64,000 nt of DNA from Asterias rubens. Taxonomy: Eukaryota. A program made the position numbers and the translations under genes. Shown one piece after another: positions 11,566 to 44,752 of the stretch. The notes below the pieces were generated by a model. The model was not told the DNA's origin. It saw only the letters and a program-made list of their open reading frames with translations, and did no database searches. Each line of letters begins with the position of its first letter. Positions within the stretch are counted from its first letter, which is position 1. The DNA lies in contig NC_047071.1 in the NCBI RefSeq assembly GCF_902459465.1, positions 4,464,001 to 4,528,000 on the forward strand, given 5' to 3'.

Positions 11566-12595
11566 ATGAAGGGCCGGGTGCGATGCTAATCAACAAAAGC
11601 TAGTACCTAAATAATCAAGTGATTATGAATGCAAAAGGTGCTCTCCAGTCTGTAGAGTCTGTAACCATTATTGCCCATATGGTGATCAGGGAGCTCTTCA
11701 AAGAGCAGACAACAGAAACAAAATCTTCGCTGTTTGTGTTTGTCGATTGTTCAACAAGCCCAAGGGACAATCATGGCTCAATATGGTGATTAAAAATTGG
11801 TTAGCAATTAACAACCTCTTTAAGTAAATAAAAAAAAAATGCAAATATGGCATAAATATATTCAATTTTGTGGTATATTCCAGGTTGTATTGCTACCCTA
11901 CAATTTACCTTAGATATTCCTATGTGACAATCTGCACAGCTTAGAAAAAAAAAAAAATTTAAATTTAACCAAAAAATGCAACAATGTGAGTTAAAAGTGA
12001 GGAACAAACTCTGTAGTATCGTAAGAAACACCAGGATTGTTATCCAGTTTCCGGTGAGAAAATTGTGAAACAAGCAGACATCAAGCTTAGCTGGGATGAT
12101 CTACACATTAGGCCAAATAAAAAATAAAAACATGTTTAGCATCCTGCCTTGTTGAAGACGAAAAAGCAAAGAGGACCTCTTTTTCTCTTTCTTAAAAATG
12201 GTCGTCCCACAATTCATAAAGACAACCAGCTGGGCTACTTAGCAATTTTTCTTAAATCTGAGATCGTTAAAATATATCACATTTTTTTCGTTAAAAAAAA
12301 GAAAAAGAAAAAAAGAAGAGAAGGCAGCCTCTAAAAAGGAAGCTTGCGGGGACGCTAAACATGTTTTACAATTTATTTGGACTTATTGAAAGACACCTGG
12401 TGTTTAGAATCCTCTCCAGGTAAGTGTTACAATGGCTACAATAAGAGGACTCTGGTGAGTGGTATATCCTGCACCGGATGGCCAACGCGTGTGGAAAGAA
12501 GAGACAAAAAACACAATTGAATTATCACAAGTCATTCTGGATAACATTGTCATCCTGTGTCACTGAGATGTCTCATTATTGTTTCTGGGTAGTCG

Positions 12596-12977
12596 TTAAA
12601 GGGAAAGTATACGTTTTGGGAACTGTCTGATTGTTTTAATCCTTTATAAATATAGATAGATACAATAAACTAACCTGTGAAAATTTCTTTCATAAGGTGG
12701 TCGTGTTGCCGAAAATCTGAGGCGGTTCGGCTTTGCAGGAAAAATAATATTGCAATTGGAAACACAATCTGAGAAGCGTTTAAGTACGATTCTCAGATTC
12801 AAGATTTTAGGGCATAAAAACTGTCATCTTTTTGCATAACATCATTACTTTGAAGTGAAGTAATTAGTTTCTCAAGAGGCCTTATTATACTATCAAAAAC
12901 TGTTGTGTACTTCAATCAAAGGTTTACATTTTGTCATTAATTTTAAGAGTGATTACATATTGTATACCCTCCCTTAA
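12596..12977. mobile_element. Family K MITE (old), TTAA-flanked; mirror copy ~40975-41359
   Basis: TTAA-agggaaagtatac ... gtataccctccc-TTAA. The right half aligns by eye to the right half of family A. Confidence 0.65.
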
Positions 12978-13271
12978 AGGTGACTGCACCACCTCTACAA
13001 GGTGAAAAAAAGAAGTTAGGAACACTTTTCCATTCGTCTTTTACTCTCTTTAAAGTTAAAGAGAACACAAAATAACCAAGAAATGACGAGAATTCCAAAT
13101 TATCAGATTAGTATTCAAAAGCTGACTTGGAGTACATGCTATGACTCCAAGGGGCATGCTTATGAATATTTACCCAAGATTCGTTCTCTGTGCTGCTTCA
13201 ATTTGTAAGTCCTATCCCCTGGTCATGAAATTTCATCAATCTTTCTTAAGGAAGGGTACCCGTTTATACTT

Positions 13272-13390
13272 TTAAAGGGAAGGTACACGTTTGGTAATTG
13301 TCAAAGACCAGTCTTCTCACTTGGTGTAGCCCAACATAAGCATAAATACAAGGCTGTGAAAATTTGAGCTAAGTTGGTCATCAAGTTGCC
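13272..13390. mobile_element. Family A-like MITE left-end fragment; mirror ~40555-40678
   Basis: TTAA-agggaaggtacacgtttggtaattgtcaaagaccagtcttctcacttggtgta...tgtgaaaatttgagct. Confidence 0.75.
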
Positions 13391-13518
13391 TCTTTTATAT
13401 GATAATTGACTGTTCTATTTCATAAACAAACAAAAATCTTTTCCTCCACTACTCCGAAAGGGGGAGAGGACAACAAACAAATAGATAAATCAAATAAAAA
13501 TAAGAAATGAAAGCATAA

Positions 13519-13706
13519 AGCCCAGTTCATACTTCATGCGAACGCGAAGCGAATTTGACGTGAATTTGACGTCACACCCTCCTTTCGCAGCAATTATTCG
13601 CAAGGGAGTAGGAGCAGAGCTGAACTGCTGCGAATTGTTCGTTGCGAATTTGTGACGTCAAGATTCGCTTCGCATTCGCATATCGCAAGAAGTAATGAAC
13701 CGGGCT
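13519..13706. mobile_element. PIF/Harbinger-like MITE with TAA target duplication; mirror ~40240-40425
   Basis: TAA-agcccagttcatacttc ... gaagtaatgaaccgggct-TAA, with internal gcgaa repeats. A 3-bp TWA TSD is the PIF/Harbinger hallmark. Confidence 0.7.
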
Positions 13707-14608
13707 TAAGACAACATGCCTACAGAGAAGTCAAGCAATGACAACTTACATACGAGTCGCGCAATTCAGGAATACTTTTTAAAAACTGTTTATGTCTGTG
13801 TATCAACTTTAACAAAGATAACAAAAAAACTATTGGCTAATTTCAGTTAGTACACTGTACTTTAAATCTCATGAAAATGAGGAACAACACTGATTGGAAT
13901 TTGATAACCAAGTCTCGATAATAAGTCTTGAAAAAAAAAATAACAACATGTCAGTCGGACTAATTTATCAGGATATAGGCTTTCCGATAAAAAGAGTTTT
14001 TATTTTGGGTCCGTTGGTAATGATGGAGATCGGCTCTTAAAGAGAATTGAATTAGGGTGAGTTACTTGTGATAACTCTTTCATCCTCTGACAGTCATCAC
14101 GGATGGTGTCTTGTGCTATCCTGAGTGCAGGGTTTCACATCCCGTAGACTTTAATTACTTAAGTGCTTCATCACTCTCTTAATTTATTTATTTGCGAAGT
14201 GAAAGGAGGAGGATATATGTGATGATTACTGGCTCATCACAAGGAAGCAGAAGAGGAGACAAGAAATCTTCCTCATCATCATTATGAAATTGTTTTTGAA
14301 GTATAACAAAAATACTTAATGCCCTGATGTTTTGACCATAGCAAAGTCTTTCTCCATGGCTAAACAAGAATTCTCTTCTCATTTTGTCTGGATTTGATTG
14401 ATTCAGCGACAAACAAACCAGCTTGGTACAGACAGTCTACAAGAAATGTCCAAAAGTGTTTTGGAGATCAAGTTACGGCAAGGATTTCAACAGGATATGA
14501 CCCAGTTGTTCACAAAGCCAAAATATCGACGTAGTTAGTGGAATAATAGCGACCCTAGTGACATTTACCTGAAGCTGTTTTTAAAATCCCCTATTGAAAC
14601 TCTTTCTC

Positions 14609-15185
14609 ACAATCAAAACAACGACTACAGACTGACAAACATGAAACAAGTTAGCATAGCACTAGCGCACAGCAATAAGAATGCTTTAAAGCAAACCTTT
14701 CTTAGCTTCCACGAAGGACAACAAAACACGTGTGTAAGGGGAAAAGCGAAATCATACATGTAGCCCTGTGCAAAAAGACTAAGAGATGAGAACATTGTGA
14801 CCCCAAAAGACTTTCTGATGTTAACATACAAATAAATGTGCGTCATGTTGAGACTTTTTCGATGACAAGCACAACAAAATAGTAGGACCGGAACGCATTC
14901 AAAATGCAGCTTTAGTAAAATGTTACAGAGATGTTGAGTTTCTCTGAATGCTCACAGTCACAGGAAACTCTCTTGAGTATGAACCCTCCTTTCCTATGCA
15001 ACATCAAAGAATGGAAATGACAATCAAAACAACGACCACAAACGGACAGACATATTAAACAAGTTAGCACAGCAGCACAGCAATAAGAATGCTTTACAGC
15101 AAACCTTGCTTCCTGAAAGGACAACATTGCACACCTTGTGTGAACCCTCCCTTCCTATGCAACATAAAAGAATGGAAATAACAAT
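14609..15185. repeat. Diverged direct repeats, unit ~160 bp; mirror ~38760-39335
   Basis: acaatcaaaacaacgac...cacagcaataagaatgcttta...gcaaacctt at 14609 and 15020. tgaaccctcc(t/c)ttcctatgcaacat...agaatggaaat at 14981 and 15141. Confidence 0.85.
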
Positions 15186-15884
15186 GCTCTTTGACCAGCT
15201 GCTAGATGCATGCATTGTATATGATTACACCACTCAACCAATATACATATCATGTCTGAAACACATGGAACAGAATATCAGTGTATTATCTCAACAAGAA
15301 AAACTAGGACAACTGCAATATATCATCCATGGTGATCAATCTGGGCCCTGAATTATGATAATTTGCAACAAAAATATGAATACATTCAAACCATATCATA
15401 TCTGTATACTCAACGAGTAATAACAAACAGATGGGTGGGGTCAATGGAAGACAAGACCTAGTAAGTTTGAACTCAACCCGAAAGTCAACGCAAATACAAT
15501 ACTGGTGAAGAGAAAGATCAGCAACAAGTAAAATTATTATGCAGTAATTTCTTCACTTCCATAAACTTCCTATGATCAAGTATTCACCAGCGTCCCAATT
15601 CATAAAGTTATTAAAGCATTATTTTTCTGTGCTTAGCAGTAATGCTTACAGGTTTTATGAAATAAGACCCATGCCTTCCTTCCTTCCTGAAAGTTTGGAT
15701 TCAACAAAAGAGAAAAGAACTCAAAACCAACCTTCTTATAATCAAAGTTACAATTGACCTTCCATAACCACCAGGAGTCTGGATTATCTCATGTCTCTTC
15801 CAGCCACCCCCCCCCTAACACGTCAGTGAGAATAACTAGTAAGGTTGGCTGGCAATAAGTATTCTAAATATTTAATCATGGTCA

Positions 15885-16479
15885 CCCAGGTCGAAATTCC
15901 AGTTGAACCTAGTTAAACTGGGTTTAACTGGATTTAGTTGAAACCAGTTCACAGATTTACAAATAACTTACAGAAGGTTTACAGAAGGTTTACAGAAGGT
16001 AGTGGTGAAAGACTTCTCTTGAAATATTATTCCATGAAATGCTTCACTTTTTGAGAAAACAGTAAAACAATATAAATTCTCGATAGCGAGAATTACGGAT
16101 TTATTTTAAACACATTTCATGACACGGCCAAAGGCGCGAATACAAGGGTGGATTTTCCCGTTATTTTCTCCCGACTCCAATGACCGATTGAGCTTAAATT
16201 TTCACAGGTTTGTTATTTGATATAGAAGTTGTGATACACGAAGTGTGGACCTTGGACAATACTATTTACCGAAAGGGTCCAATGGCTTTAAACACAGTTA
16301 AAACCAGTTGGTTTAATATGGAAAATGGACAGAGACCAACTGGTTTATAATTTCAACCTAGTTGAACACAGTTAAACTTAGTCCAAACCAGTTGGTTAAT
16401 ATGGAAAATGGACGAGTTTGATCACTATCCAGTTGAACCAGTTGACCCCAGTTAACTAGGTTCAACTGGAATTTTGACC
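15885..16479. mobile_element. Family E MITE (aactgg/ccagtt-rich) carrying a nested, truncated family B MITE (15951-16291); mirror ~37475-38056
   Basis: TIR cccaggtcgaaattccagttgaacctag ... ctaggttcaactggaattttgacc. An uninterrupted paralog lies at 53835-54105. Confidence 0.85.
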
Positions 16480-16599
16480 ATATGCATATGGTTTGATAGA
16501 CATGGCACTTATACTCTTGTCATATTCTTGCATACTGCACATAGCATTCAAGTGGCAAACTCAGGCTGCACTTGAACCGCCCCATAGTCAGGGTTGAGC

Positions 16600-16878
16600 T
16601 AGTCTTGGTACAAGACGCTCAATGCTGAGTTGGTTAACAACCTCTATGGTAATATCGTATAGGCCCCATACACTCAACGCTACACACAGCTTGACTATTC
16701 CACCGATAGAGGGCGATTCTGTAAGCCGCACTCGCGCCAGTTGAGTGTTGTGTGATGATCTAGAAGTTTTCCAACAGCGTCCGCTGACATTCAATAGTAA
16801 TGTGCATGGCGAGGAGAAAGGGAACATTTATCGCGATAGATGACTGATAGTGAATAACAACATCTTGCACAAAGACTA
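16600..16878. mobile_element. Non-autonomous element with a 9-bp TSD (Mutator/MULE-like); mirror ~37074-37350
   Basis: gggttgagc|tagtcttggtaca ... tgcacaaagacta|gggttgagc (TSD at 16591-16599 and 16879-16887, imperfect 13-bp TIR). Confidence 0.65.
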
Positions 16879-18555
16879 GGGTTGAGCTAGATCCAGCACT
16901 ATGGTTCTAGTCCGCGAGGAAGAAACAAAGTATTTTTCTTTAAATTATGATTTAGCCTTGAGAAAGATTCTGCTAGGTAAAAAAAAAAAATTTTGTTTGC
17001 ATTTATACCATAGGTCCTTTTTGACAGCAAGCAGTTTGCAACAGCTAATACTTTTTTCAAATGATAAAACAGGTAGAGTCTTAAATCACTGATTCTGCCT
17101 ATAGTAGCTTGTGCTGCAGCCAATAACTAGAGGGAACACAAGCTCAATTTAAATAGAGTACAACGAGGATGTCAAAGTTTCCTGAGCTTGATGTTTTACA
17201 AACGCTCAAAAACAAATCACACAGCAGTTCAAAGCTGTCTGTAGATTATGAGAAAAACATGTGACATTCTGGTGATTTTGCACAGTATCAAAACGATCAT
17301 TACTAAAGCTGCAGTTCTCCATCTAAGAAATGATACTTCATAAAATTGCATTAGTAGAGGGCATATTGATTTCATGAAAAAAATATTTCAGACTTCATTG
17401 AAATAAAATGAACAATCCATACGGGAAAATTCTATAAAGGAGACCAGTGACCCCTAAACTGTTAAATAGATAATATTTATTTTAAGAACATTTTTGGCAA
17501 TCCAAGCAAGGCACCGTGAAACCGCAGTTCGGCTTTAATTGGATGTTGGCTTTAAATTGTCCAGCACCTGGAATTGAAACTAACGCCCTGAAAGAAAAGA
17601 ACCATGTAGCTGTCAAGCAAGGGGATAAGTTTCCAGTGTGAGTTTCAGAACTTATGCTCCACAGGGAAAGGCAGGTTCGCCTGAAATTATTCCACTAATT
17701 TGGTTGCCATGGCATTGCCTACATGGAATTGAATATGTTTTGTGGATAGTAACTGTCTAAATAAAAAACTTTTGTGCAAGGTTCAAGTGAAGAATAACAA
17801 CTTTTTTTTGAAATGTTAGTTTGGTTTTGAAAGAAATGTGTAGAAATTTCCGCTTCTTTTAAAGGAAATAATTATCATGAACTTTCCCATATTATCAAAA
17901 CAAGTGATTGATGACTGATGTACCTTTTTGTTTTGTGTTTATATAACTGTACATTATGTTTTCTCAAAATACTACAAACTAAAAAGCGAAACCTACCACT
18001 GGTTTTGCTTCTATCCAAAGTGAACTTGATTTCTTTAATAAGACTGAATCATTGGAACTACATTTTCATCTGTGACTTCTGTTTTATATGACTGTTCCCA
18101 TTCCCGTAACCTTAATCCCCAACCCCTTGATCCCCACCAGTCCTAAACTGGGCTGCAAGTAATTGCCTTCTTACACTTGTTTGTATATTTATAGCTGTTA
18201 GTAATTGCCCTAGCTCTTTAACCTAGCTTTCTATGGGCTCTAAGCATTGGAGAGTGCAAGTCCCCTTTCCTTCTGATTAAGGCACACTCCCTTACCAAAC
18301 CAACCCCCGGGGATGTACCCCTTGGGTCTCAGGTAGTTGCCCTTTTAGTGTAACTCTTGTTTCCTTGTTTAGACTTTAGATTCTTTGGCTCCACACATAA
18401 GAAGTGCTGGATTAGCGGCCATTAGTCAGCCCTATCACCTGTGGGGCGGAGACACGGAACCTGACATCACTCCAACCTAAAGGTTAAGGTCACAGTGAGA
18501 AAAACAAACAGGGGGGCAACCTACTCAGTTTCTTTATGACGTCAGTAGTCATACT

Positions 18556-18929
18556 TTAAAGGCAGTGGACACTATTGGTAATTACTCAAAATAATTATTG
18601 GCATAAAACCTTTCTTCGTGACGAGTAATGGGGAGAGGTAGATGGTATAAAACTTTGTGGGAAACAGCTCCCTCTGAAGTGACGTAGTTTTCGAGAAAGA
18701 AGTAATTTTCCACAAATTTGATTTCGAGACCTCAGGTTTAGAACTTGAGGTCTCGAAATCAACCATCTAAACGCACACAACTTCGTGTGACAATGGTTAT
18801 TTTTCTTTTATTATTATCTCGCAACTTCGATGACCGATTGAGCTCAAATTTTCGTAGGTTTGTTATTTTATGCATATGATCAGAAAATAACAGTCTTTGA
18901 CAATTACCAATAGTGTCCACTGTCTTTAA
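18556..18929. mobile_element. Family A MITE, full length; mirror 35025-35398
   Basis: TTAA-aggcagtggacactattggtaatt ... aattaccaatagtgtccactgtct-TTAA. Confidence 0.92.
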
Positions 18930-20171
18930 AACATGGGTGAAAAGAAGACAGATGTCCCTACGTGTAGGTTTGGGCCTCTTCACAGAAGAAGCAGCAGTTC
19001 ATCACATAACAAGGGCTGGAAAATCACGAAGGTCATGGCCTCTGATGCCCTGGTCTTGGCCTTTGTGCCCCTTCAAAAGTTTCCCATAGACTTAAAGATT
19101 TTCCAATGGAACTGCCAATGCAAAATGATGAAATTCCAGGCCTGCATGACTTATAACTGTTTTTCTAAACTGAATATACAAAGCTTTCTTGACAGTAGAC
19201 TGGTGAACAAGTCATTAAATGTTTGTCGATGATATAGCGTTCCGACTCTGCGAGACTGCTAGCCCCTGCGAGACATCGGTTTTATATAATTAAGAGTAAC
19301 AGTCGTGACTCGGGAGCTCGTTGCCTCGCGCAGAGCAGCAATGATCTCGCACGAGCATTCTTTAAATCCAGAGAGCTACTTAGTGTATTACACTTTCCCG
19401 ATATTAACGACTTTTCCAAAGGTCTATCTTGGTAGCAGAGTCACCAAAAACAAAACATTAACAATTATTTTCCGTACATGCTTTCAAACAAAGATATGGA
19501 CCAGGAATGTAAGAGCCCATTTCATAAATGCTTGCATTTCCCATCAGATTGTCAGAGATGCCTGTAAGATGTTACAAGATTTCACACATTGCTTGTAAAG
19601 CTACTCCTCCTATATCAAGAACCTCCTCAAATATTCCAATCTAATTTGTCACTTTTGCTAGGGGAGGCTACAGATCTAAATGTGTTTGAGTGACGAGTTT
19701 TTGTTTTGATAACTTAACTTCTTATTTTTAGCGTCTAGATTACTGCAGGGGTTGACTGTGACTCACGTCATGGCCACCCTATCATCTTTAGACTGGTCAG
19801 TTTTGTGTTTGTAGGCGGGAGTAAATGGTTGAAGCACTTAATAACTCATCAATCAATGGGTGGATCTACCTCGGGGTACCTTAGGGAAATGGCAAAACCA
19901 TTTAGTCTAATTTTAAGTCATAAACCACAAGGGTCTAAATTTAATAACATGTACAGAGATGAAAAAACAGGCCTAGGTACTTTGCTTTTTAGTCAAAGTG
20001 AAGTTGTGATGTTAAATTCAATAATAAATGAGCAATTTAAAAATGGCTGCTATTTACTGAAGAAATTTTAATTGCTTGGAGCAAAGAGCGTTTAGTGCTA
20101 ACCAGGAAACAAGTAGAGCATAACCCGTTTACAAACAGCGCACAACCTGAACACACAAGTTATTGTAACAC

Positions 20172-20468
20172 CATAGAGTTATATATAAGAATTAGAGGGC
20201 GCACTGGTGATGCTTCTTGCACAAACGCAACGGGACCGCAAGGAGACACGCGCGCTCCATTCTGTCTGCGCGTTGAATATGAATTACACGTTGGAGTTTG
20301 TGTTTATTGACCGCTACGCGACGCTGTTTTTTTTTTCAACTTACAAAATGGCCGCACAAACACCACTAAGCAATGCCTGTTTTGTCAACTTAGAAAATGG
20401 CCGCCTACGCGCATGCCGGGTCGCGTATATAGGCCAGTGCGCCCTCTAGTTCTTATATATAACTCTAT
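20172..20468. mobile_element. MITE with 35-bp TIRs (catagag termini); mirror ~33486-33782
   Basis: atagagttatatataagaattagagggcgcactgg matches the reverse complement of 20434-20468 at 34/35 positions. Possible 4-bp TSD acac. Confidence 0.85.
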
Positions 20469-22543
20469 ACACTCTAAGTATTATAGCTTTGTGCTTTTCA
20501 TTAAATTTAAGTAATGTTTGCCTTACAAACATGATATTGTTAATACTATTTTCTTATTATTCTGGTGCAAACTATTCTAGCAGCGAACACTTTGCTTGAG
20601 TTTTATCATCCATCTTAGAGAACAAGTAGCTTCATTTTCCTTGAGTTTTTGTTCTTTGTATTGTTGTTATTATTATTTACTCATATTGAGCTGTTTTGTC
20701 CAATAAAATATGAAGAAGAAAAATACTGCCTAAAGCCACCCTTGTGCAAACAAGACATCACTCTCATGACAAACCAGAGTTTTTTCATTTTACAATGCAC
20801 ATGGCTAAAGTGAGTAAGCATCGATTCCATGCCTCTACCCACTCGTTATCCAAAACCTCAATTTATTATATCGGTAAATACACACGCAGAAAACCATCCA
20901 ACATTAGTTTACAAAATCTACCCCAGATAATAACCACACATGCATATGATATGCGCATTTATTTAAGGTAGCTGATGTTCCATACATGCTCGCACTCTCT
21001 GCGCCGACAAGCAGCCACACTCGTCCATGATTATCCCGCGCTGCAGATGTCAATATGCTAACATTCAAAATTGGACAGGCCGCGGCAATGTCTATGTATA
21101 TGCATATATTTTAGGCTTCTACACACGGGTAGTGTGTAGCATGGCATAAGTGACAATCAATAATAATTGACTGGGTAACTCACTCATGCAGAGACACAGA
21201 ATAGAGGGAAACGAGATCGGGCGGGAGGGACAGAGATAGCGGGGGAGAGGGGAGAGTGTGTCGACGAGGTGGGGGGGGGGTACAAACAAGACAAGACAGA
21301 GGGAGAGAGAAAAGGGGAAAAAGGTAGCCTGGCTTGCTTGGAATCACTCGCTAGGGGTTAATGCAAACATCGTCGGCGGTAATACCGATTGTTGACGACC
21401 CTCCAAATAGACAATTTATTTTCATTTTGGGATTTCACTGCAGTGAGTGTAAAGTGCACTCTCTCAATTATATTGTATGCCTTTTTCCAGGGGAAGTAAA
21501 TTTAATTAATATACACGTTGACATTTATGTATGTTGTTACGGAAAGTGCTGAGAAATGTGTGTGCATTATTCACACCTTGAGTGAAGATAGTTCGTACAT
21601 AATGTTTGCAAAGATTCCAGTTAAGGGTTCTTGTGCATTGACAGATTTTGCTTCGATTGTTTGTGTCGAATTCATGAGCAGTGGCGTTGCTAAGTAAATT
21701 AGTAGAAACCCATTTTAGGAAAAACAAAGAGAAGCTCTGAGGCACAAAGTTACAAGAGAAAAAAAAAACAAAAAAAAACTCCCCGTCATTAATCCAGATA
21801 ATTTATAGCCCTGAAAAGTGTAGTGTGAATGCTCCATCATTATCCTTGTATCATGTGTTTCTCATTCTAAACTGAACAAACATCATAACTTGAAGAAATT
21901 AGCTAATCAAAATTGTCCACATGGAAGCAGTTAATCATATTTACCTGTAAGGTGAAGAGTTTCCATACACTATAATTTACTCTTTTAAAAAAAAAAGAAA
22001 TCTTCACATTAACTCACCGCTCCTAAATCATGTAACTATTAGCAAATAACAGACATTACCTCCCCAAACAAAGTGTCAATTAATGATTACAAGCCAGCCC
22101 TTTCCTGTCAGGAAACAACAGTGTCATAAAATGCATCATTCCTGCGAGAATTCAGTGTCTGCTTTGTAACAAAGTTAAGAGAGAGATTAGGGAGTAAAGA
22201 TCCTGACAGGAGAAACCCAACTTTCCCCATCAGTGAATGTATAGATGCTTCATCATATCCTGTTATTTCACTGTGCACAAGGGGATCAATAGGCAGCTGT
22301 GAATTAAAGGTCAGTTGCAGCTGGGCGTAAACTGGGTTAATGCTGGGTAAACTGTAAGGTAACTGTTGGGTGGAGATTGGGTGATCATGGGTACCGGTAT
22401 GTCATACCCAGATAGCACAAAGATTGATGTACAGTAGAGGAAGGTTGGGAATTATAAAAAGTAGACAAACATAAGGGAATATTCATTACAATTTGAGAAA
22501 AGAAAACAATTAGGTGCATTTTTGAAAATTATCGCATATACAG

Positions 22544-22695
22544 GATGCGTTCGTTTAGCTTCCCTGGGTCGACCCCGGTGTGTGGTTGTTTTTTTTTTTC
22601 CCAGGATGAACGTGGGCCATATCTGCACACGTTCGTCCTGGAAAAAGAAAACGCCACACACCGAGGTCGTCCCGGGGAAGCTAAACGAACGCACC
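22544..22695. mobile_element. Fold-back MITE (~150 bp, almost entirely self-complementary); mirror ~31267-31422
   Basis: tgcgttcgtttagcttccc...ccggtgtgtgg pairs with ccacacaccg...gggaagctaaacgaacgca. Inner arms ccaggatgaacgtg / cacgttcgtcctgg. Confidence 0.85.
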
Positions 22696-23394: not shown

Positions 23395-23597
23395 TTAAAG
23401 GGAAACACGTCACAAAAAAATATTTTAGCATGTAAAACGTATTTTTGTGATGCACTCATTTCTCAACAACTACAGCACCTCAGCAAGTAATATTTTCAGG
23501 GAAGCTTTCTACTATCATTATCTTCAAACTGTGTACGTTTAATGTAAATCTGTGGACATTGTGTTTTGTGTCCTACAAAAGTACCCAGACCCTTTAA
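23395..23597. mobile_element. Family C MITE, deleted derivative, TTAA-flanked; mirror ~30374-30573
   Basis: actacagcacctcagca(a/c)gtaatattttcagggaagctttctactatcattatcttcaaactgtg is shared with 45667-45730. It ends gtacccagaccct-TTAA. Confidence 0.8.
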
Positions 23598-25211: not shown

Positions 25212-25245
25212 CCTGGAGACGGTCAGAGCATACTGATTGAAATAA
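25212..25245 (+). repeat. Second, more decayed copy of the hammerhead-like repeat; mirror ~28722-28752
   Basis: cctggagacggtcagagcatactgattgaaat versus cctgaagacgatcagagcatactgattgaaac at 10294. Confidence 0.6.
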
Positions 25246-25286
25246 TGATTGTCAATAACTGGTTGGTTTAGAACCACCACAACCCA

Positions 25287-33100: not shown

Positions 33101-36100
33101 TTTGGATAACGAGGGGTAGAGGCATGGAATCGATGCTTACTCACTTTAGCCATGTGCATTGTAAAATGAAAAAACTCTGGTTTGTCATGAGAGTGATGTC
33201 TTGTTTGCACAAGGGTGGCTTTAGGCAGTATTTTTCTTCTTCATATTTTATTGGACAAAACAGCTCAATATGAGTAAATAATAATAACAACAATACAAGA
33301 ACAAAAACTCAAGGAAAATGAAGCTACTTGGTCTCTAAGAGGGATGATAAAACTCAAGCAAAGTGTTCGCTGCTAGAATAGTTTGCACCAGAATAATAAG
33401 AAAAAGTATTAACCAATATCATGTTTGTAAGGCAAACATTACTTAAATTTAATGAAAAGCACAAAGCTATAATACTTAGAGTGTATAGAGTTATATATAA
33501 GAACTAGAGGGCGCACTGGCCTATATACGCGACCCGGCATGCGCGTAGGCGGCCATTTTCTAAGTTGACAAAACAGGCATTGCTTAGTGTGTTTGTGCGG
33601 CCATTTTGTAAGTTGAAAAAAAAAAACAGCGTCGCGTAGCGGTCAATAAACACAAACTCCAACGTGTAATTCATATTCAACGGCGCAGACAGAATGGAGC
33701 GCGCGTGTCTCCTTGCGGTCCCGTTGCGTTTGTGCAAGAAGCATCACCAGTGCGCCCTCTAATTCTTATATATAACTCTATGGGTGTTAACAATAACTTG
33801 TGTGTTTCAGGTTGTGCGCTGTTTGTAAACGGGTTTATGCTCTACTTGTTTCCTGGTTAGCACTAACGCTCTTTGCTCCAAGCAATTAAAATTTCTTCAG
33901 TAAATAGCAGCCATTTTAAATTGCTCATTTATTATTGAATTTAACATCACCAACTTCACTTGACTAAAAAGCAAAGTACCTAGGCCTGTTTTTTCATCTC
34001 TGTACATGTTATTAAATTTAGACCCTTGTGGTTTATGACTTAAAATTAGACTAAATGGTTTTGCCATTTCCCTAAGGTACCCCGAGGTAGATCCACCCAT
34101 TGATTGATGAGTTATTAAGTGCTTCAACCATTTACTCCCGCCTACAAACACAAACTGACCAGTCTAAGATGATAGGGTGGCCATGACGTGAGTCACAGTC
34201 AACCCCTGCAGTAATCTAGACGCTAAAAATAAGAAGTTAAGTTATCAAAACAAAAACTCGTCACTCAAACACATTTAGATCTGTAGCCTCCCCTAGCAAA
34301 AGGGACAAATTAGATTGGAATATTTGAGGAGGGTTCTTGATATAGGAGGAGTAGCTTTACAAGCAATGTGTGAAATCTTGTAACATCTTACAGGCATCTC
34401 TGACAATCTGATGGAAATGCAAGCATTTATGAAATGGGCTCTTACATTCCTGGTCCATATCTTTGTTTGAAAGCATGTACGGAAAATAATTGTTAATGTT
34501 TTGTTTTTGGTGACTCTGCTACCAAGATAGACCTTTGGAAAAGTCGTTAATATCGGGAAAGTGTAATACACTAAGTAGCTCTCTGGATTTAAAGAATGCT
34601 CGTGCGAGATCATTGCTGCTCTGCGCGAGGCAACGAGCTCCCGAGTCACGACTGTTACTCTTAATTATATAAAACCGATGTCTCGCAGGGGCTAGCAGTC
34701 TCGCAGAGTCGGAACGCTATATCATCGACAAACATTTAATGACTTGTTCACCAGTCTACTGTCAAGAAAGCTTTGTATATTCAGTTTAGAAAAACAGTTA
34801 TAAGTCATGCAGGCCTGGAATTTCATCATTTTGCATTGGCAGTTCCATTGGAAAATCTTTAAGTCTATGGGAAACTTTTGAAGGGGCACAAAGGCCAAGA
34901 CCAGGGCATCAGAGGCCATGACCTTCGTGATTTTCCAGCCCTTGTTATGTGATGAACTGCTGCTTCTTCTGTGAAGAGGCCCAAACCTACACGTAGGGAC
35001 ATCTGTCTTCTTTTCACCCATGTTTTAAAGACAGTGGACACTATTGGTAATTGTCAAAGACTGTTATTTTCTGATCATATGCATAAAATAACAAACCTAC
35101 GAAAATTTGAGCTCAATCGGTCATCGAAGTTGCGAGATAATAATAAAAGAAAAATAACCATTGTCACACGAAGTTGTGTGCGTTTAGATGGTTGATTTCG
35201 AGACCTCAAGTTCTAAACCTGAGGTCTCGAAATCAAATTTGTGGAAAATTACTTCTTTCTCGAAAACTACGTCACTTCAGAGGGAGCTGTTTCCCACAAA
35301 GTTTTATACCATCTACCTCTCCCCATTACTCGTCACGAAGAAAGGTTTTATGCCAATAAATTATTTGAGTAATTACCAATAGTGTCCACTGCCTTTAAAG
35401 TATGACTACTGACGTCATAAAGAAACTGAGTAGGTTGCCCCCCTGTTTGTTTTTCTCACTGTGACCTTAACCTTTAGGTTGGAGTGATGTCAGGTTCCGT
35501 GTCTCCGCCCCACAGGTGATAGGGCTGACTAATGGCCGCTAATCCAGCACTTCTTATGTGTGGAGCCAAAGAATCTAAAGTCTAAACAAGGAAACAAGAG
35601 TTACACTAAAAGGGCAACTACCTGAGACCCAAGGGGTACATCCCGGGGGTTGGTTTGGTAAGGGAGTGTGCCTTAATCAGAAGGAAAGGGGACTTGCACT
35701 CTCCAATGCTTAGAGCCCATAGAAAGCTAGGTTAAAGAGCTAGGGCAATTACTAACAGCTATAAATATACAAACAAGTGTAAGAAGGCAATTACTTGCAG
35801 CCCAGTTTAGGACTGGTGGGGATCAAGGGGTTGGGGATTAAGGTTACGGGAAATGGGAACAGTCATATAAAACAGAAGTCACAGATGAAAATGTAGTTCC
35901 AATGATTCAGTCTTATTAAAGAAAATCAAGTTCACTTTGGATAGAAGCAAAACCAGTGGTAGGTTTCGCTTTTTTAGTTTGTAGTATTTTGAGAAAACAT
36001 AATGTACAGTTATATAAACACAAACAAAAAGGTACATCAGTCATCAATCACTTGTTTTGATAATAGGGGAAAGTTCATGATAATTATTTCCTTTAAAAGA

Positions 36101-39100
36101 AGCGGAAATTTCTACACATTTCTTTCAAAACCAAAACTAACATTTCAAAAAAAAGTTGTTATTCTTCACTTGAACCTTGCACAAAAGTTTTTTATTTAGA
36201 CAGTTACTATCCACAAAACATATTCAATTCCATGTAGGCAATGCCATGGCAACCAAATTAGTGGAATAATTTCAGGCGAACCTGCCTTTCCCTGTGGAGC
36301 ATAAGTTCTGAAACTCACACTGGAACTTATCCCCTTGCTTGACAGCTACATGGTTCTTTTCTTTCAGGGCGTTAGTTTCAATTCCAGGTGCTGGACAATT
36401 TAAAGCCAACATCCAATTAAAGCCGAACTGCGGTTTCACGGTGCCTTGCTTGGATTGCCAAAAATGTTCTTAAAATAAATATTATCTATTTAACAGTTTA
36501 GGGGTCACTGGTCTCCTTTATAGAATTTTCCCGTATGGATTGTTCATTTTATTTCAATGAAGTCTGAAATATTTTTTTCATGAAATCAATATGCCCTCTA
36601 CTAATGCAATTTTATGAAGTATCATTTCTTAGATGGAGAACTGCAGCTTTAGTAATGATCGTTTTGATACTGTGCAAAATCACCAGAATGTCACATGTTT
36701 TTCTCATAATCTACAGACAGCTTTGAACTGCTGTGTGATTTGTTTTGAGCGTTTGTAAAACATCAAGCTCAGGAAACTTTGACATCCTCGTTGTACTCTA
36801 TTTAAATTGAGCTTGTGTTCCCTCTAGTTATTGGCTGCAGCACAAGCTACTATAGGCAGAATCAGTGATTAAGACTCTACCTGTTTATCATTTGAAAAAA
36901 GTATTAGCTGTTGCAAACTGCTTGCTGTCAAAAAGGACCTATGGTATAAATGCAAACAAAATTTTTTTTTTTTACCTAGCAGAATCTTTCTCAAGGCTAA
37001 ATCATAATTTAAAGAAAAATACTTTGTTTCTTCCTCGCGGACTAGAACCATAGTGCTGGATCTAGCTCAACCCTAGTCTTTGTGCAAGATGTTGTTATCA
37101 CTATCAGTCATCTATCGCGATAAATGTTCCCTTTCTCCTCGCCATGCACATTACTATTGAATGTCAGCGGACGCTGTTGGAAAACTTCTAGATCATCACA
37201 CAACACTCAACTGGCGCGAGTGCGGCTTACAGAATCGCCCTCTATCGGTGGAATAGTCAAGCTGTGTGTAGCGTTGAGTGTATGGGGCCTATACGATATT
37301 ACCATAGAGGTTGTTAACCAACTCAGCATTGAGCGTCTTGTACCAAGACTAGCTCAACCCTGACTATGGGGCGGTTCAAGTGCAGCCTGAGTTTGCCACT
37401 TGAATGCTATGTGCAGTATGCAAGAATATGACAAGAGTATAAGTGCCATGTCTATCAAACCATATGCATATGGTCAAAATTCCAGTTGAACCTAGTTAAC
37501 TGGGGTCAACTGGTTCAACTGGATAGTGATCAAACTCGTCCATTTTCCATATTAACCAACTGGTTTGGACTAAGTTTAACTGTGTTCAACTAGGTTGAAA
37601 TTATAAACCAGTTGGTCTCTGTCCATTTTCCATATTAAACCAACTGGTTTTAACTGTGTTTAAAGCCATTGGACCCTTTCGGTAAATAGTATTGTCCAAG
37701 GTCCACACTTCGTGTATCACAACTTCTATATCAAATAACAAACCTGTGAAAATTTAAGCTCAATCGGTCATTGGAGTCGGGAGAAAATAACGGGAAAATC
37801 CACCCTTGTATTCGCGCCTTTGGCCGTGTCATGAAATGTGTTTAAAATAAATCCGTAATTCTCGCTATCGAGAATTTATATTGTTTTACTGTTTTCTCAA
37901 AAAGTGAAGCATTTCATGGAATAATATTTCAAGAGAAGTCTTTCACCACTACCTTCTGTAAACCTTCTGTAAGTTATTTGTAAATCTGTGAACTGGTTTC
38001 AACTAGTTCCAGTTAAACCCAGTTTAACTAGGTTCAACTGGAATTTCGACCTGGGTGACCATGATTAAATATTTAGAATACTTATTGCCAGCCAACCTTA
38101 CTAGTTATTCTCACTGACGTGTTAGGGGGGGGGGGGGTGGCTGGAAGAGACATGAGATAATCCAGACTCCTGGTGGTTATGGAAGGTCAATTGTAACTTT
38201 GATTATAAGAAGGTTGGTTTTGAGTTCTTTTCTCTTTTGTTGAATCCAAACTTTCAGGAAGGAAGGAAGGCATGGGTCTTATTTCATAAAACCTGTAAGC
38301 ATTACTGCTAAGCACAGAAAAATAATGCTTTAATAACTTTATGAATTGGGACGCTGGTGAATACTTGATCATAGGAAGTTTATGGAAGTGAAGAAATTAC
38401 TGCATAATAATTTTACTTGTTGCTGATCTTTCTCTTCACCAGTATTGTATTTGCGTTGACTTTCGGGTTGAGTTCAAACTTACTAGGTCTTGTCTTCCAT
38501 TGACCCCACCCATCTGTTTGTTATTACTCGTTGAGTATACAGATATGATATGGTTTGAATGTATTCATATTTTTGTTGCAAATTATCATAATTCAGGGCC
38601 CAGATTGATCACCATGGATGATATATTGCAGTTGTCCTAGTTTTTCTTGTTGAGATAATACACTGATATTCTGTTCCATGTGTTTCAGACATGATATGTA
38701 TATTGGTTGAGTGGTGTAATCATATACAATGCATGCATCTAGCAGCTGGTCAAAGAGCATTGTTATTTCCATTCTTTTATGTTGCATAGGAAGGGAGGGT
38801 TCACACAAGGTGTGCAATGTTGTCCTTTCAGGAAGCAAGGTTGCTGTAAAGCATTCTTATTGCTGTGCTGCTGTGCTAACTTGTTTAATATGTCTGTCCG
38901 TTTGTGGTCGTTGTTTTGATTGTCATTTCCATTCTTTGATGTTGCATAGGAAAGGAGGGTTCATACTCAAGAGAGTTTCCTGTGACTGTGAGCATTCAGA
39001 GAAAACTCAACATCTCTGTAACATTTTACTAAAGCTGCATTTTGAATGCGTTCCGGTCCTACTATTTTGTTGTGCTTGTCATCGAAAAAGTCTCAACATG

Positions 39101-42100
39101 ACGCACATTTATTTGTATGTTAACATCAGAAAGTCTTTTGGGGTCACAATGTTCTCATCTCTTAGTCTTTTTGCACAGGGCTGCATGTATGATTTCGCTT
39201 TTCCCCTTACACACGTGTTTTGTTGTCCTTTGTGGAAGCTAAGAAAGGTTTGCTTTAAAGCATTCTTATTGCTGTGCGCTAGTGCTATGCTAACTTGTTT
39301 CATGTTTGTCAGTCTGTAGTCGTTGTTTTGATTGTGAGAAAGAGTTTCAATAGGGGATTTTAAAAACAGCTTCAGGTAAATGTCACTAGGGTCGCTATTA
39401 TTCCACTAACTACGTCGATATTTTGGCTTTGTGAACAACTGGGTCATATCCTGTTGAAATCCTTGCCGTAACTTGATCTCCAAAACACTTTTGGACATTT
39501 CTTGTAGACTGTCTGTACCAAGCTGGTTTGTTTGTCGCTGAATCAATCAAATCCAGACAAAATGAGAAGAGAATTCTTGTTTAGCCATGGAGAAAGACTT
39601 TGCTAGGGTCAATACATCAGGGCATTAAGTTTTTTTTTTATACTCTTCAAAAACAATTTCATAATGATGATGAGGAAGATTTCTTGTCTCCTCTTCTGCT
39701 TCCTTGTTATGAGCCAGTAATCATCACATATATCCTCCTCCTTTCACTTCGCAAATAAATAAATTAAGAGAGTGATGAAGCACTTAAGTAATTAAAGTCT
39801 ACGGGATGTGAAACCCTGCACTCATGATAGCACAAGACACCGTCCGTGATGACTGTCAGAGGATGAAAGAGTTATCACAAGTAACTCACCCTAATTCAAT
39901 TCTCTTTAAGAGCCGATCTCCATCATTACCAACGGACCCAAAATAAAAACTCTTTTTATCGGAAAGCCTATATCCTGATGAATTAGTCCGACTGACATGT
40001 TGTTATTTTTTTTTCAAGACTTATTATCGAGACTTGGTTATCAACTTCCAATCAGTGTTGTTCCTCATTTTCATGAGATTTAAAGTACAGTGTACTAACT
40101 GAAATTAGCCAATAGTTTTTTTTGTTATCTTTGTTAAAGTTGATACACAGACATAAACAGTTTTTAAAAAGTATTCCTGAATTGCGCGACTCTGTATGTA
40201 AGTTGTCATTGCTTGACTTCTCTGTAGGAATGTTGTCTTAAGCCCGGTTCATACTTCTTGCGAATGCGAATGCGAAGCGAATCTTGACGTCACAAATTCG
40301 CAACGAACAATTCGCAGCAGTTCAGCTCTGCTCTACTCCCTTGCGAATAATTGCTGCGAAAGGAGGGTGTGACGTCAAATTCACGTCAAATTCGCTTCGC
40401 GTTCGCATGAAGTATGAACTGGGCTTTATGCTTTCATTTCTTATTTATTTATTTATTTATTTATTTGTTTGTTGTCCTCTCCCCCTTTCAGGATTAGTGG
40501 AGGAAAAGATTTTTGTTTGTTTATGAAATAGAACAGTCAATTATCATATAAAAGAGGCAACTTTGATGACCAACTTAGCTCAAATTTTCACAGCCTTGTT
40601 ATTTTATGCTTATGTTGGGCTACACCAAGTGAGAAGACTGGTCTTTGACAATTACCAAACGTGTACCTTCCCTTTAAAAGTATAAACGGGTACCCTTCCT
40701 TTAAGAAAGATTGATGAAATTTCATGACCAGGGGATAGGACTTACAAATTGAAGCAGCACAGAGAACGAATCTTGGGTAAATATTCATAAGCATGCCCCT
40801 TGGAGTCATAAGCATGTACTCCAAGTCAGCTTTTGAATACTAATCTGATAATTTGGAATTCTCGTCATTTCTTGGTTATTTTGTGTTCTCTTTAACTTTA
40901 AAGAGAGTAAAAGACGAATGGAAAAAGTGTTCCTAACTTCTTTTTTTCCACTTTGTAGAGGTGGTGCAGTCACCTTTAAGGGAGGGTATACAATATGTAA
41001 TCACTCTTAAAATTAATGACAAAATGTAAACCTTTTGATTGAAGTACACAACAGTTTTTGATAGTATAAATAAGGCCTCTTGAGAAACTAATTACTTCAC
41101 TTCAAAGTAATGATGTTATGCAAAAAGATGACAGTTTTTATGCCCTAAAATCTTGAATCTGAGAATCGTACTTAAACGCTTCTCAGATTGTGTTTTCCAA
41201 TTGCAAATTATTTTTCCTGCAAAGCCGAACCGCTCCAGATTTTCGGCAACACGACCACCTTATGAAAGAAATTTTCACAGGTTAGTTTTATTGTATCTAT
41301 CTATATTTATAAAAGATTAAAACAATCAGACAGTTCCCAAAACGTGTACTTTCCCTTTAACGACTACCCAGAAACAATAATGAGACATCTCAGTGACACA
41401 GGATGACAATGTTATCCAGAATGACTTGTGATAATTCAATTGTGTTTTTTGTCTCTTCTTTCCCACCACGCGTTGGCCATCCGGTGCAGGATATACACTC
41501 ACCAGAGTCCTCTTATTTGTTAGCCATTGTTAACACTTACCTGGAGAGGATTCTAAACACCAGGTGTCTTTCAATAAGTCCAAATAAATTGTAAAACATG
41601 TTTAGCGTCCCCGCAAGCTTCCTTTTTAGAGGCTGCCTTCTCTTCTTTTTTTCTTTTTATTTTTTTAATGAAAAAAATGTGATATATTTTAACAATCTCA
41701 GATTTAAGAAAAATTGCTAAGTAGCCCAGCTGGTTGTCTTTATGAATTGTGGGACGACCATTTTTAAGAAAGAGAAAAAGAGGTCCTCTTTGCTTTTTCG
41801 TCTTCAACAAGGCAGGATGCTAAACATGTTTTTATTTTTTATTTGGCCTAATGTGTAGATCATCCCAGCTAAGCTTGATGTCTGCTTGTTTCACAATTTT
41901 CTCACCGGAAACTGGATAACAATCCTGGTGTTTCTTACGATACTACGGAGTTTGTTCCTCACTTTTAACTCACATTGTTGCATTTTTTGGTTAAATTTAA
42001 TTTTTTTTTTTTCTAAGCTGTGCAGATTGTCACATAGGAATATCTAAGGTAAATTGTAGGGTAGCAATACAACCTGGAATATACCACAAAATTGAATACA

Positions 42101-44752
42101 TTAATGCCATATTTGCATTTTTTTTTTTATTTACTTAAAGAGGTTGTTAATTGCTAACCAATTTTTAATCACCATATTGAGCCATGATTGTCCCTTGGGC
42201 TTGTTGAACAATCGACAAACACAAACAGTGAAGATTTTGTTTCTGTTGTCTGCTCTTTGAAGAGCTCTGCGGAGAGCTCTCTGATCACCATATGGGCAAT
42301 AATGGTTACAGACTCTACAGACTGGAGAGCACCTTTTGCATTCATAATCACTTGATTATTTAGGTACTAGCTTTTGTTGATTAGCATCGCACCCGGCCCT
42401 TCATGGCTGAATAGATTATGCAGAATCTAATGCAGGTTCTGACCACCAGCTCTTCATTTTGCTCCTCAAACAAAAATACCCGATGGTTGCATAAATACCC
42501 AGATCATTGTTGATTTTTTTATTTAACAGAAAAAATAGTTCACCTCATATAATTTATTTATTTATTTATTTATTTCAACAAAACCTCAAAATTGGAGAAG
42601 ATGTACATACATTATATTTACAATAAAAGGTACAAATGGTATTAACATTGTGACAAAAGTGATATTTTGATTGCATTTGTAACAGAGAAAAGCTCAAATT
42701 TGCTTTGAATAACTAAATTGTTGGTTAAGTCATCATTATCAGCAGAGATATTTACTATTAGAGAGTTTTTTTTAGGTAATTTGTTGGGAGATTGGATGGG
42801 CAATTGAGGGAAGCTTTTGAAAAGCATAATCAAAAGACAGAAATTATTGTATTGAAATATAAATTTATATATAATTCTCAAAAGAACTTAATCTACCCAG
42901 CAAGTAGATATGATATATACACACTTATGACTGCAAACGAAACATTGATACCTCACCATGCAACGCCTTAAGTCCGAGAAGGTTTTCAAATCAGTTTCAT
43001 TCAGAGTGGATTTATTTTATATATAAAAAAAATAATAATCAAATCATGATGTGGTGATGTGGTTAAACTTCTAGTGTATTCCAAGTCCAATTCCAATCCC
43101 ATGATTTATTCCGATTCAACCTCAATCTGACAGACCCCCTTTATAAGCCATTCCTGTATCAAAATTGTAAATCACCGAATACAGTCCGGAAGCAAAGTCA
43201 AAACAGAATTGATGGGGAAAAAATCAAGCCTGATCACTTCGGATCCAAAGCATAAGCCCTAGTCTCGCAAATATCATTAGAGCAGCATGCAGTCCTGAAG
43301 CAAAGGTTAGTTATTAGGAGAGAGAGAGAGAGAGCAAGACAAAAAAAAATGCCAGCCCGTTTTAGCTGCAGTGGATAGAGTAGATGCTATTGATAAGGCG
43401 ATTGTGCACGCATGATGGTCAGCTGAAGAGATCATTATCCACCTAGCATAGGATCTTATTATCTACTTATAAAGCGGCAGTTTTTTTATTTTTGATGTAC
43501 ACGTTTCTAATGACACGTACGGAGCGTGATTCACTCACTAGATACCGGGCTAACTGAACAATTGAAGTCTTCAGTCTTCACCACGTCAATGTTTAGCATA
43601 GCGCAGGGGTGTCCTTGCCTCTAGATGTCTGTGGTCACACTGCAAGCTGTTCATATTTTTTTAAAGAAGTAATCGGTAATTGTATGTGTTGAAGAAAACT
43701 TAAATTTGTTTTTGCCAGTCAATTTGAGTCAAAATATCTCCCCCACGTTAATCTGTGTATTTTGTTCCTTTAAAAGGCAAGATACATACACCTTATATTT
43801 CCTCCTTTGTTTATCTGTGATGTGATGATTTATTTGCCATTATCTTCAGTGAGTAAAGTTCTTTGTAAACAACCTTTTGGTTATATTCATAATAACTATT
43901 ATTAAAAGATACACAAGCAATAGCTACTTCTCAATATATATTTTTTTTCTTAAATCTTAAATCTCATATAGTCCTGGTTAAACAAATATTTTGAAAATTA
44001 TTTTAAAAAAATAGTCTGTATGAATTGAGTCACTGCTTTGACTACACATCACTGTTGGTTTCAGATAGAAATATTCATATTTTTTAATGAACCAGTTGGT
44101 TATTATTACATGTTGGTTATTATTGAGACTTAAAATAAACAAAATTTCAAATCAATTTCAGATTATACTTTTCCGATTGTCGCCAGATATTAACATTACG
44201 TGTAATACCCTCTAAAGGTCCAATATTTTGTAATAATGAGCACGGTTTCCATGCAGATGGCGAGCATTGTTCCGTGACAAACGGCTCGTTCCAAACCAAA
44301 TAAAGGTTTACAATATGAACAGCCTTAACGCTTATTGTGCCGAGGTCGAGCGCTCCATTGTGTGGTTAAAAAAAAAACAGCTGAAGACTGCCGGCACAAA
44401 ACTCTCACAAGAGTAACCCTTTTTCCCACTTTAAGTGGCTTCCGCTTGCATTTATATCACATTATATATATTTTTGTGTTTATCTGTGGTGTTTGCTGGC
44501 AGTGGGCGTGTAGCAAGTGCACAAGGGGGGAAATTATTGGTTTACAGTTATATGCCAGAGTGCGTCACAAGTATTGACGTTGTGTTGTTACAAAAGCAAC
44601 CTTTTAAAGTCCTCGCTGTGTTCATCCGATGACCTTCTCAAGCATGTTTTTGTAAAACATTTATTTGCGTCTGGATTATTTAGTGCAAATCCTGTACCAA
44701 AATATATCAAGTTTTCACTTTAAAATGTGGCTTTTGAAAAAATGAAGGCACT

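What the first reader, a model, noticed from the sequence alone, without database searches (positions are those of the whole stretch)
11566..42404. 30.8-kb near-perfect palindrome with only a 7-nt spacer, starting exactly at a contig edge
Seen: 11566-26980 is the reverse complement of 26988-42404. The left arm begins at the first base after a 500-N gap, and the right arm runs on into unique sequence at 42405. Established: palindromes with such short spacers extrude cruciforms and are very unstable in vivo, and fold-back chimeric long or amplified reads produce exactly this contig-end structure. Inference: the left arm is most likely a spurious copy, so gene or TE counts here would be doubled. 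If the structure is real, it is a remarkable giant palindrome (breakage-fusion-bridge or Y-palindrome-like).
Basis: partly seen in the sequence, partly recalled or inferred. Interest (0 to 1): 0.8.

Follow-up and report, generated by a model that had tools for sequence, protein, structure and literature searches.

The report
Fold-back assembly artefact at contig end
The 30.8-kb palindrome exists in the assembled sequence, but short-read data show its arms at the same copy number as the neighbouring unique DNA, so the left arm is most likely a false inverted copy made by a fold-back long read at a transposon's hairpin.

Summary
Window 11566-26982 is the reverse complement of 26986-42404, and the left arm starts at the first base after a 500-N gap. 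It is not near-perfect: the arms are 98.6% identical, with 41 substitutions and 151 indels, 145 of them one base long and 129 in homopolymer context. The spacer is 3 nt (CTA), not 7.

The central 45 nt is letter for letter a native hairpin (21-bp stem) of a ~385-nt TTAA-flanked MITE. An intact copy at 51414-51458 has the same 45-mer. Only what follows the hairpin is abnormal.

I laid short-read contigs of four public runs (three samples) on 39400-45399. Their word depth in the arm equals the depth in the unique flank (X1 125-157 against 134-146; X2 about 117 in both). Contigs cross 42404/42405 without a break. A true palindrome ending there would give 2:1, and a heterozygous one 1.5:1.

Where tested, the one-base differences are errors and the substitutions are alleles of one locus.

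Verdict: a hairpin-mediated fold-back chimeric long read built into the contig end, probability about 0.87. The residual rival is a real palindrome with arms longer than the assembled left arm, which this depth test cannot see. Interest is low.

The parts
11066..11565 (.). 500-N scaffold gap; the contig that carries the palindrome starts at 11566
11566..26961 (+). Left arm outside the hairpin. Judged a spurious inverted copy of 27007-42404.
11566..14566 (+). Outer zone of the left arm (the contig end). It holds 24 of the 41 substitutions and many 1-bp deletions. Short-read contigs support the right-arm form at 15 or more of 16 one-base indels tested. Substitutions at the mirror sites 39708, 39825, 39842 and 39980, and the 12-nt indel at 42269-42280, are allelic.
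19566..26980 (+). Inner zone: 7-16 one-base indels per kb (10-16 in all but the short last bin) and few substitutions. Both arms are noisy here, the right arm rather more, by shares of sampled words held in run X1.
26784..27006 (+). Left half of a ~385-nt TTAA-flanked MITE, from its terminal inverted repeat at 26784 to the end of its internal hairpin. The normal right half (ATTCGTGGAAAATTAC...) is missing and is replaced by the reverse complement of the left half.
26962..27006 (.). Native MITE hairpin with a 21-bp stem and 3-nt loop (CTA, 26983-26985), which is the axis of the palindrome. The same 45-mer occurs in the intact copy at 51414-51458. DNA fold -22.7 kcal/mol.
27007..42404 (-). Right arm: the arm that is contiguous with the unique flank. 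With that flank it represents the single-copy locus.
42405..45399 (.). Unique flank used as the depth reference. Its per-contig word depth equals that of the arm, and contigs of X1, X2 and X3 bridge 42404/42405.

Best explanation
The palindrome is an assembly artefact. The genome holds one copy of the 15.4-kb segment, represented here by the right arm and its flank. One long-read library molecule, or very few, was closed at one end by the 45-nt internal hairpin of a MITE. That could happen in two ways: a 3' end snapped back on the 21-bp stem and was extended, or the folded end was ligated to the opposite strand. Either way the read ran down one strand, round the native hairpin and back up the other strand. 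The assembler used this fold-back read at the end of a contig, so the second pass dangles as the left arm and ends at the contig edge, 11566, where a Hi-C-type 500-N join follows. Two near-identical copies then competed for reads during polishing, which left single-base indel noise in the arms. What is shown: the structure, the native hairpin at the axis, the equal depth of arm and flank, the lack of a branch at 42404/42405, and the error and allele nature of the differences tested. What is inferred: the molecular route to the hairpin-capped molecule, the sequencing platform, and the small number of reads involved.
For: (1) Copy number (table 8). Word depth of long, nearly identical short-read contigs: X1 arm 151.8, 131.3, 125.4, 156.8, boundary contig 144.1, flank 142.4, 146.1, 133.6. 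X2 arm 120.7, 115.1, 116.4 (half-level 66.9, 78.9), flank 117.5 (half-level 67.1). X4 arm 177.6, 171.9, 145.7, flank 199.1, 197.8. X3 arm 2.2-7.3, flank 3.9-8.9. The ratio is about 1.0, not 2.0 or 1.5. In a k-mer graph the two arms of a real palindrome collapse into one contig of double depth.
(2) X1 (42230-42543), X2 (42283-42543) and X3 (42067-42543) contigs cross 42404/42405, so there is no repeat-boundary branch there.
(3) The differences are not evolutionary: 151 indels against 41 substitutions, 145 indels of 1 bp, 129 in homopolymer context, ts:tv 17:24.
(4) In 40653-41204 the arms differ at 7 one-base indels and 1 substitution. The X1 contig matches the right arm with 0 differences, and at the sites listed in 40767-40925 it is the only X1 contig laid (all_depth 156.8), so the left-arm forms are absent from those short reads there.
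(5) At 39708, 39825, 39842 and 39980 the left-arm letter is carried by short-read contigs; the right-arm letter also occurs among X1/X2 (one sample) at 39708 and 39980, and in X3 only at 39825 and 39842. For the 12-nt indel at 42269-42280, X1 appears to carry the left-arm form and X3 the right-arm form. These are alleles of one locus at normal total depth.
(6) The left arm starts at the first base of a contig.
(7) The axis is the exact centre of one of 11 non-redundant MITE hairpins in about 48 kb. The chance of that is about 7e-4. No foreign or adapter letters are present.
(8) Fold-back and palindromic long reads are a documented artefact. They make up about 0.55-0.6% of ONT genomic reads and are thought to arise in library preparation (PMC12870357). 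Missed or missing SMRTbell adaptors and amplification give palindromic reads and inverted duplications in assemblies (PMC6218980; PMC6304105).
(9) Lead only, not tested: an earlier scan note reports another palindrome, 25 kb long, that also starts exactly at a scaffold gap elsewhere in this genome.
Against: No read or contig could be followed across the axis, so the native continuation (the MITE right half plus another flank) was not seen. The depth test compares the arm only with the next 3 kb. A real palindrome whose arms reach beyond 45399, with the left arm merely truncated by the contig end, would also give 1:1. It is not proven that X1/X2 come from the assembled individual. The tool itself warns that summed contig depth is not a copy number; I used per-contig depths of unique contigs instead. 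Near the axis the right arm is at least as noisy as the left, so poor quality of the left arm is shown only for the outer 3 kb, where a contig-end effect could explain it under either model.
Confidence: 0.87

Rival explanations
1. It is a real germline palindrome, seeded by the MITE hairpin (a hairpin-capped break replicated into an inverted duplication). Its arms are longer than the assembled 15.4 kb. The left arm is cut short by the contig end, and the rest is hidden in the gap.
For: The axis at a 21-bp-stem inverted repeat is also what in-vivo palindrome formation from short inverted repeats predicts (Tanaka et al. 2002, cited in PMC12870357). A depth ratio of 1:1 between the arm and the next 3 kb is compatible if both are duplicated. 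Noise in both arms near the axis fits failed polishing of a true repeat.
Against: It needs at least 3 kb more of hidden arm. The contig left of the gap shows no mirror of 42405-64000. From established knowledge, long palindromes with spacers of a few bases are highly unstable in eukaryotic cells, and known large genomic palindromes have kb-scale spacers. No quarter-level depth class is seen among the listed contigs. Runs labelled organism B and a metagenome also show arm depth equal to or below flank depth.
Confidence: 0.06
2. The fold-back molecule was real DNA in the animal but rare, for example a somatic or transient hairpin-capped break or replication template switch at the MITE hairpin. 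It was not made in the library. It was sampled once and assembled.
For: The junction is identical to that of the artefact model, with a native hairpin and no foreign letters. Single-copy depth fits a rare molecule.
Against: It cannot be told from a library artefact with the data available, and nothing requires an in-vivo origin. For the reference sequence the consequence is the same: the left arm is not part of the germline genome.
Confidence: 0.05
3. The left arm is an uncollapsed alternative-haplotype contig joined in the wrong orientation by the assembler, with no fold-back molecule involved.
For: The substitutions in the outer 3 kb are allelic, so part of the left arm carries the other haplotype's letters.
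Against: The join has no gap and sits to the base at the centre of a 45-nt native hairpin. A haplotig misjoin has no reason to do that. The allele-like letters are confined to the outer zone and can come from a fold-back read of the other haplotype or from polishing.
Confidence: 0.02

Closest known systems
Fold-back (palindromic) chimeric long reads and the inverted duplications they cause in assemblies (PMC12870357; PMC6218980; 'missed adapters' in PMC6304105)
   Same: An inverted duplicate with an almost absent spacer, located at a contig end. The arms are at single-copy depth. The differences between the arms are sequencing noise.
   Different: The turn lies neither at a random molecule end nor at an adapter, but exactly in a native 21-bp-stem hairpin of a MITE. 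This points to snap-back at a natural inverted repeat and not to a missed adapter or an unsplit template/complement read.
In-vivo palindrome formation from short inverted repeats, and breakage-fusion-bridge fold-back inversions (Tanaka et al. 2002, as cited in PMC12870357)
   Same: A short inverted repeat sits at the centre of a large palindrome with a spacer of a few bases.
   Different: Those events double the copy number of the arms, and here arm depth equals flank depth. They are known from amplification in cultured or tumour cells, not from stable germline loci.
Large ampliconic palindromes of sex chromosomes (for example human Y P1-P8; own knowledge)
   Same: Arms of tens of kb with more than 98% identity.
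   Different: Those have kb-scale spacers, 2x depth, and arm differences that are substitutions erased by gene conversion. Here the spacer is 3 nt, the depth is 1x, and the differences are one-base indel noise.

Membership tests
Fold-back chimeric-read assembly artefact | The inverted duplicate abuts a contig end or gap | tested here: met
   The left arm starts at 11566, the first base after the 500-N run.
Fold-back chimeric-read assembly artefact | The duplicated segment has single-copy read depth (arm depth equals flank depth in k-mer terms) | tested here: met
   Per-contig word depth of arm against flank is about 1.0 in X1, X2, X3 and X4. Caveat: the reference is only the adjacent 3 kb.
Fold-back chimeric-read assembly artefact | Differences between the copies are sequencing errors, not divergence | tested here: met
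   145 one-base indels against 41 substitutions. At least 15 of 16 tested indels have the right-arm form in the short-read contigs; over 40767-40925 no other X1 contig is laid. The substitutions tested are alleles.
Fold-back chimeric-read assembly artefact | Only one or very few long reads span the axis, and most reads continue into different sequence | not testable with these tools
   Only k=31 contigs of older runs were on offer. The MITE core is shared by a very large number of copies (summed depth up to about 3e7), so contigs stop at it.
Genuine large genomic palindrome (ampliconic or BFB type) | Arms present twice per haplotype (2x depth against unique flank, and a graph branch at the outer arm boundary) | tested here: not met
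   The depth ratio is about 1.0, and contigs bridge 42404/42405 in three runs. This would be escaped only if the true arms extend beyond 45399.
Genuine large genomic palindrome (ampliconic or BFB type) | The structure is present in independent individuals or assemblies | tested here: inconclusive
   Other samples (X3, X4) show no excess arm depth, but the junction itself could not be examined.
TTAA-flanked MITE (the element at the axis) | Short non-coding element with terminal inverted repeats, a constant flanking target motif, and many copies | tested here: met
   11 intact paired-TIR copies about 330-390 nt long (plus the fold-back pair at the centre), a ~27-nt TIR (A)GGCAGTGGACACTATTGGTAATT, and TTAA abutting the ends of the copies inspected. 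No ORF or Pfam hit. The superfamily (piggyBac-like by TTAA only) was not tested, and no autonomous partner was sought.

The most novel reading that the evidence does not exclude
The palindrome is real. A hairpin-capped break at the 21-bp-stem hairpin of a MITE was replicated into a germline inverted duplication of more than 18 kb per arm, with a 3-nt spacer, and a sea-star genome tolerates it. The assembled left arm would be only its truncated inner part.
Probability: 0.06. Interest if true: 0.6.

Novelty: not a real feature. Interest (0 to 1): 0.1.

Why it matters
The value is practical. About 15.4 kb of this scaffold (11566-26982) is probably false sequence. It doubles the repeat counts there and inserts spurious DNA between two contigs. 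The axis also falls precisely in a MITE hairpin. That suggests fold-back library molecules can be seeded by natural inverted repeats, which would bias such artefacts towards MITE-rich genomes. No gene is affected: no ORF in the arms has a Pfam match.

Tried and rejected
(1) I did not lay reads on the axis. Only one read-laying run was allowed, all runs were k=31 contigs, and the MITE core is shared by so many copies that contigs cannot cross it.
(3) I checked whether 1-11065 mirrors the right flank, or holds the native continuation of the central MITE. It does neither. The MITE at 10408-10735 is a different copy, about 91% identical.
(4) I first read the loop (AAACT against the family's AAATC) as a product of the fold-back. 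I rejected this because an intact copy at 51414-51458 has the identical 45-mer.
(5) The idea that the left arm is the poor copy over its whole length is rejected. Shares of sampled words show both arms noisy near the axis, the right arm rather more.
(6) The Rfam scan of the window found nothing. Pfam scans of 12 ORFs found nothing. ORF intactness therefore gives no gene-based test of which arm is correct.
(7) Literature search for the assembly method of the presumed species found no primary description. The platform therefore remains inferred.

Full report
OBSERVATION

The window has one N run, 11066-11565, and sequence resumes at 11566. blastn of 11566-27000 against 26961-43000 on the opposite strand gives a single alignment of 15,524 columns at 98.6% identity, with 41 mismatches and 151 gap openings. 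The palindrome is therefore real in the assembled sequence, and it ends on the right at 42404, opposite the first base of the contig.

There are 192 differences. Of the 151 indels, 145 are one base long and 129 lie in homopolymer context. Transitions to transversions are 17:24.

The differences fall in three zones:
- An outer 3 kb (11566-14566) holds 24 of the 41 substitutions and many indels.
- A quiet middle (14566-19566) has 3-8 differences per kb.
- An inner zone runs to the axis, with 7-16 one-base indels per kb (10-16 in all but the short last bin) and few substitutions.

An excess of indels over substitutions of nearly 4:1 is the signature of long-read consensus error, not of divergence between two old copies.

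THE AXIS

The centre reads TTGATTTCGAGACCTCAAGTT-CTA-AACTTGAGGTCTCGAAATCAA (26962-27006). This is a 21-bp stem with a 3-nt loop, at -22.7 kcal/mol as DNA. The strict spacer is therefore 3 nt, not 7.

This 45-mer belongs to a repeat family with 11 intact paired-end copies in the window, besides the fold-back pair at the centre. The family is about 385 nt long, has ~27-nt terminal inverted repeats ((A)GGCAGTGGACACTATTGGTAATT), is flanked by TTAA, has no coding capacity, and carries the hairpin in its middle.

An intact copy at 51414-51458 carries exactly the same 45-mer. No letter of the axis is therefore foreign or new. Native copies continue after the hairpin with ATTCGTGGAAAATTAC.... The central copy continues with CCATCTAAACGC..., which is the reverse complement of its own left side.

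The window holds 11 non-redundant hairpins in about 48 kb of non-redundant sequence. The chance that a random fold-back point hits the centre of one is about 7e-4. The turn was therefore mediated by the hairpin. It is not a random molecule end, as with an unsplit template/complement read, and not a missed adapter, for which there is no room.

COPY NUMBER

Sequence searches found public runs that hold this DNA. X1 and X2 are one sample of 'organism A', X3 is a marine metagenome, and many runs belong to 'organism B'. All are kept as k=31 contigs.

The MITE core is far too repetitive for such contigs to cross. Summed depths reach about 3e7 at MITE copies. I therefore spent the single read-laying run on the arm/flank boundary, 39400-45399. 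In a k-mer graph the two arms of a true palindrome collapse into one contig of double depth, and the graph branches at the outer arm boundary.

Observed per-contig depths:

| Run | Arm | Boundary contig | Flank |
|---|---|---|---|
| X1 | 151.8, 131.3, 125.4, 156.8 | 144.1 | 142.4, 146.1, 133.6 |
| X2 | 120.7, 115.1, 116.4 (half-level 66.9, 78.9) | 257.6 (see below) | 117.5 (half-level 67.1) |
| X4 | 177.6, 171.9, 145.7 | none listed | 199.1, 197.8 |
| X3 | 2.2-7.3 | 3.57 | 3.9-8.9 |

The ratio is 1.0 within scatter, which excludes 2:1 and also 1.5:1 (a heterozygous palindrome). Contigs of X1, X2 and X3 bridge 42404/42405 with more than 100 letters on each side. The X2 boundary contig (42283-42543) is an unexplained exception at 257.6, about twice the X2 level.

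A palindrome whose arms end where the assembly says they end is thus refuted. The test cannot see a palindrome whose arms continue beyond 45399, with the left arm merely cut by the contig end. The contig left of the gap shows no mirror of 42405-64000, so such a structure would need at least 3 kb of arm hidden in the gap.

NATURE OF THE DIFFERENCES

In 40653-41204 the arms differ at seven one-base indels and one substitution. The X1 contig matches the right arm without a single difference. It is also the only X1 contig laid at the sites listed in 40767-40925 (all_depth 156.8), so the left-arm forms do not exist in those short reads there.

Over all X1-covered unique intervals of the arm, at least 15 of 16 one-base indels are errors of the left arm.

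The left-arm letters at 39708, 39825, 39842 and 39980 all occur in short-read contigs. At 39708 and 39980 both forms occur among X1/X2, which are one sample. At 39825 and 39842 the right-arm letter occurs only in X3. For the 12-nt indel at 42269-42280, X1 appears to carry the left-arm form and X3 the right-arm form. All are at normal total depth. They are alleles of one locus.

Near the axis the picture is symmetrical. The left arm alone (24000-26980) has 295 sampled words, of which X1 holds 0.76. Both arms together (24000-29999) have 416, of which X1 holds 0.62. By my arithmetic only about 34 of the 121 right-arm-specific words are held, against roughly 0.4-0.7 of the left-specific ones.

Both arms are therefore noisy in the inner zone. 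This fits two near-identical copies that could not be polished because reads map to both. It does not by itself distinguish artefact from reality. The poor quality of the outer left arm can also be a contig-end effect.

MECHANISM

This is the best-supported account; its steps are inferred. A library molecule broke in or beside the MITE. Its end folded on the 21-bp stem and was either extended by a repair or strand-displacing polymerase or sealed to the opposite strand. That produced a hairpin-capped duplex.

A long read then ran along one strand, round the native loop and back. The assembler overlapped one half with normal reads and left the other half dangling as a contig end. A Hi-C-style scaffolder later placed the 500-N join there.

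Fold-back reads are documented:
- About 0.55-0.6% of nanopore genomic reads are fold-backs, and they are thought to arise during library preparation (PMC12870357).
- Missed or missing SMRTbell adaptors and amplification yield palindromic reads and inverted duplications in assemblies (PMC6218980; PMC6304105).

An earlier, untested scan note reports another palindrome, 25 kb long, starting exactly at a scaffold gap elsewhere in this genome. That would fit a systematic artefact.

RIVALS

- A real germline palindrome with longer arms (0.06).
- A rare in-vivo hairpin-capped molecule sampled by chance (0.05). It cannot be distinguished here, and the consequence for the reference is the same.
- A haplotig misjoin without a fold-back read (0.02). 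This does not explain a gapless join at the exact centre of a hairpin.

CONTENT AND IDENTITY

The arms hold no ORF with a Pfam match and no Rfam family. The only doubled features are MITE copies, other repeats and a ~101-nt two-copy tandem.

Earlier scan notes call the genome a sea star, and one names Asterias rubens. I did not verify this, and I found no primary description of how the assembly was made.

VERDICT

The feature is most likely not real in the genome. Interest is low.

Noticed in passing
window 8232-8615, 10408-10735, 18557-18927, 26157-26538, 27428-27809, 35027-35397, 44755-45137, 46009-46390, 51253-51635, 53388-53776, 58542-58926: A very abundant MITE family, about 385 nt long. 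It has ~27-nt terminal inverted repeats, TTAA on both flanks and a conserved central 45-nt hairpin with a 17-21-bp stem. There is roughly one copy per 5 kb here, and summed short-read contig depth reaches about 3e7 against about 146 for single-copy DNA in run X1. The conserved internal hairpin is unexplained.
   Followed up: partly
If its axis also lies in a MITE hairpin, the artefact is systematic in this assembly.
   Followed up: no
window 24172-24372 and mirror 29596-29797: A two-copy tandem repeat of a ~101-nt unit inside the arms (86-88% match between copies).
   Followed up: no
window 42283-42543: In run X2 the contig across the arm/flank boundary has depth 257.6, about twice the X2 level of 117, and carries a GATC insertion behind 42501. 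The matching X1 contig from the same sample has a normal 144.1. Possibly a low-copy repeat or merged alleles; unexplained.
   Followed up: no
window 42405-45399: Contigs of 'organism B' (X4) differ from the flank by 61 letters and 31 gaps over about 1.8 kb, many of them one-base deletions. Contigs of X1 and X2 differ by 8-10 letters and 7 gaps over 1.9-2.0 kb. So even the unique flank carries either residual indel errors or dense heterozygous indels.
   Followed up: no
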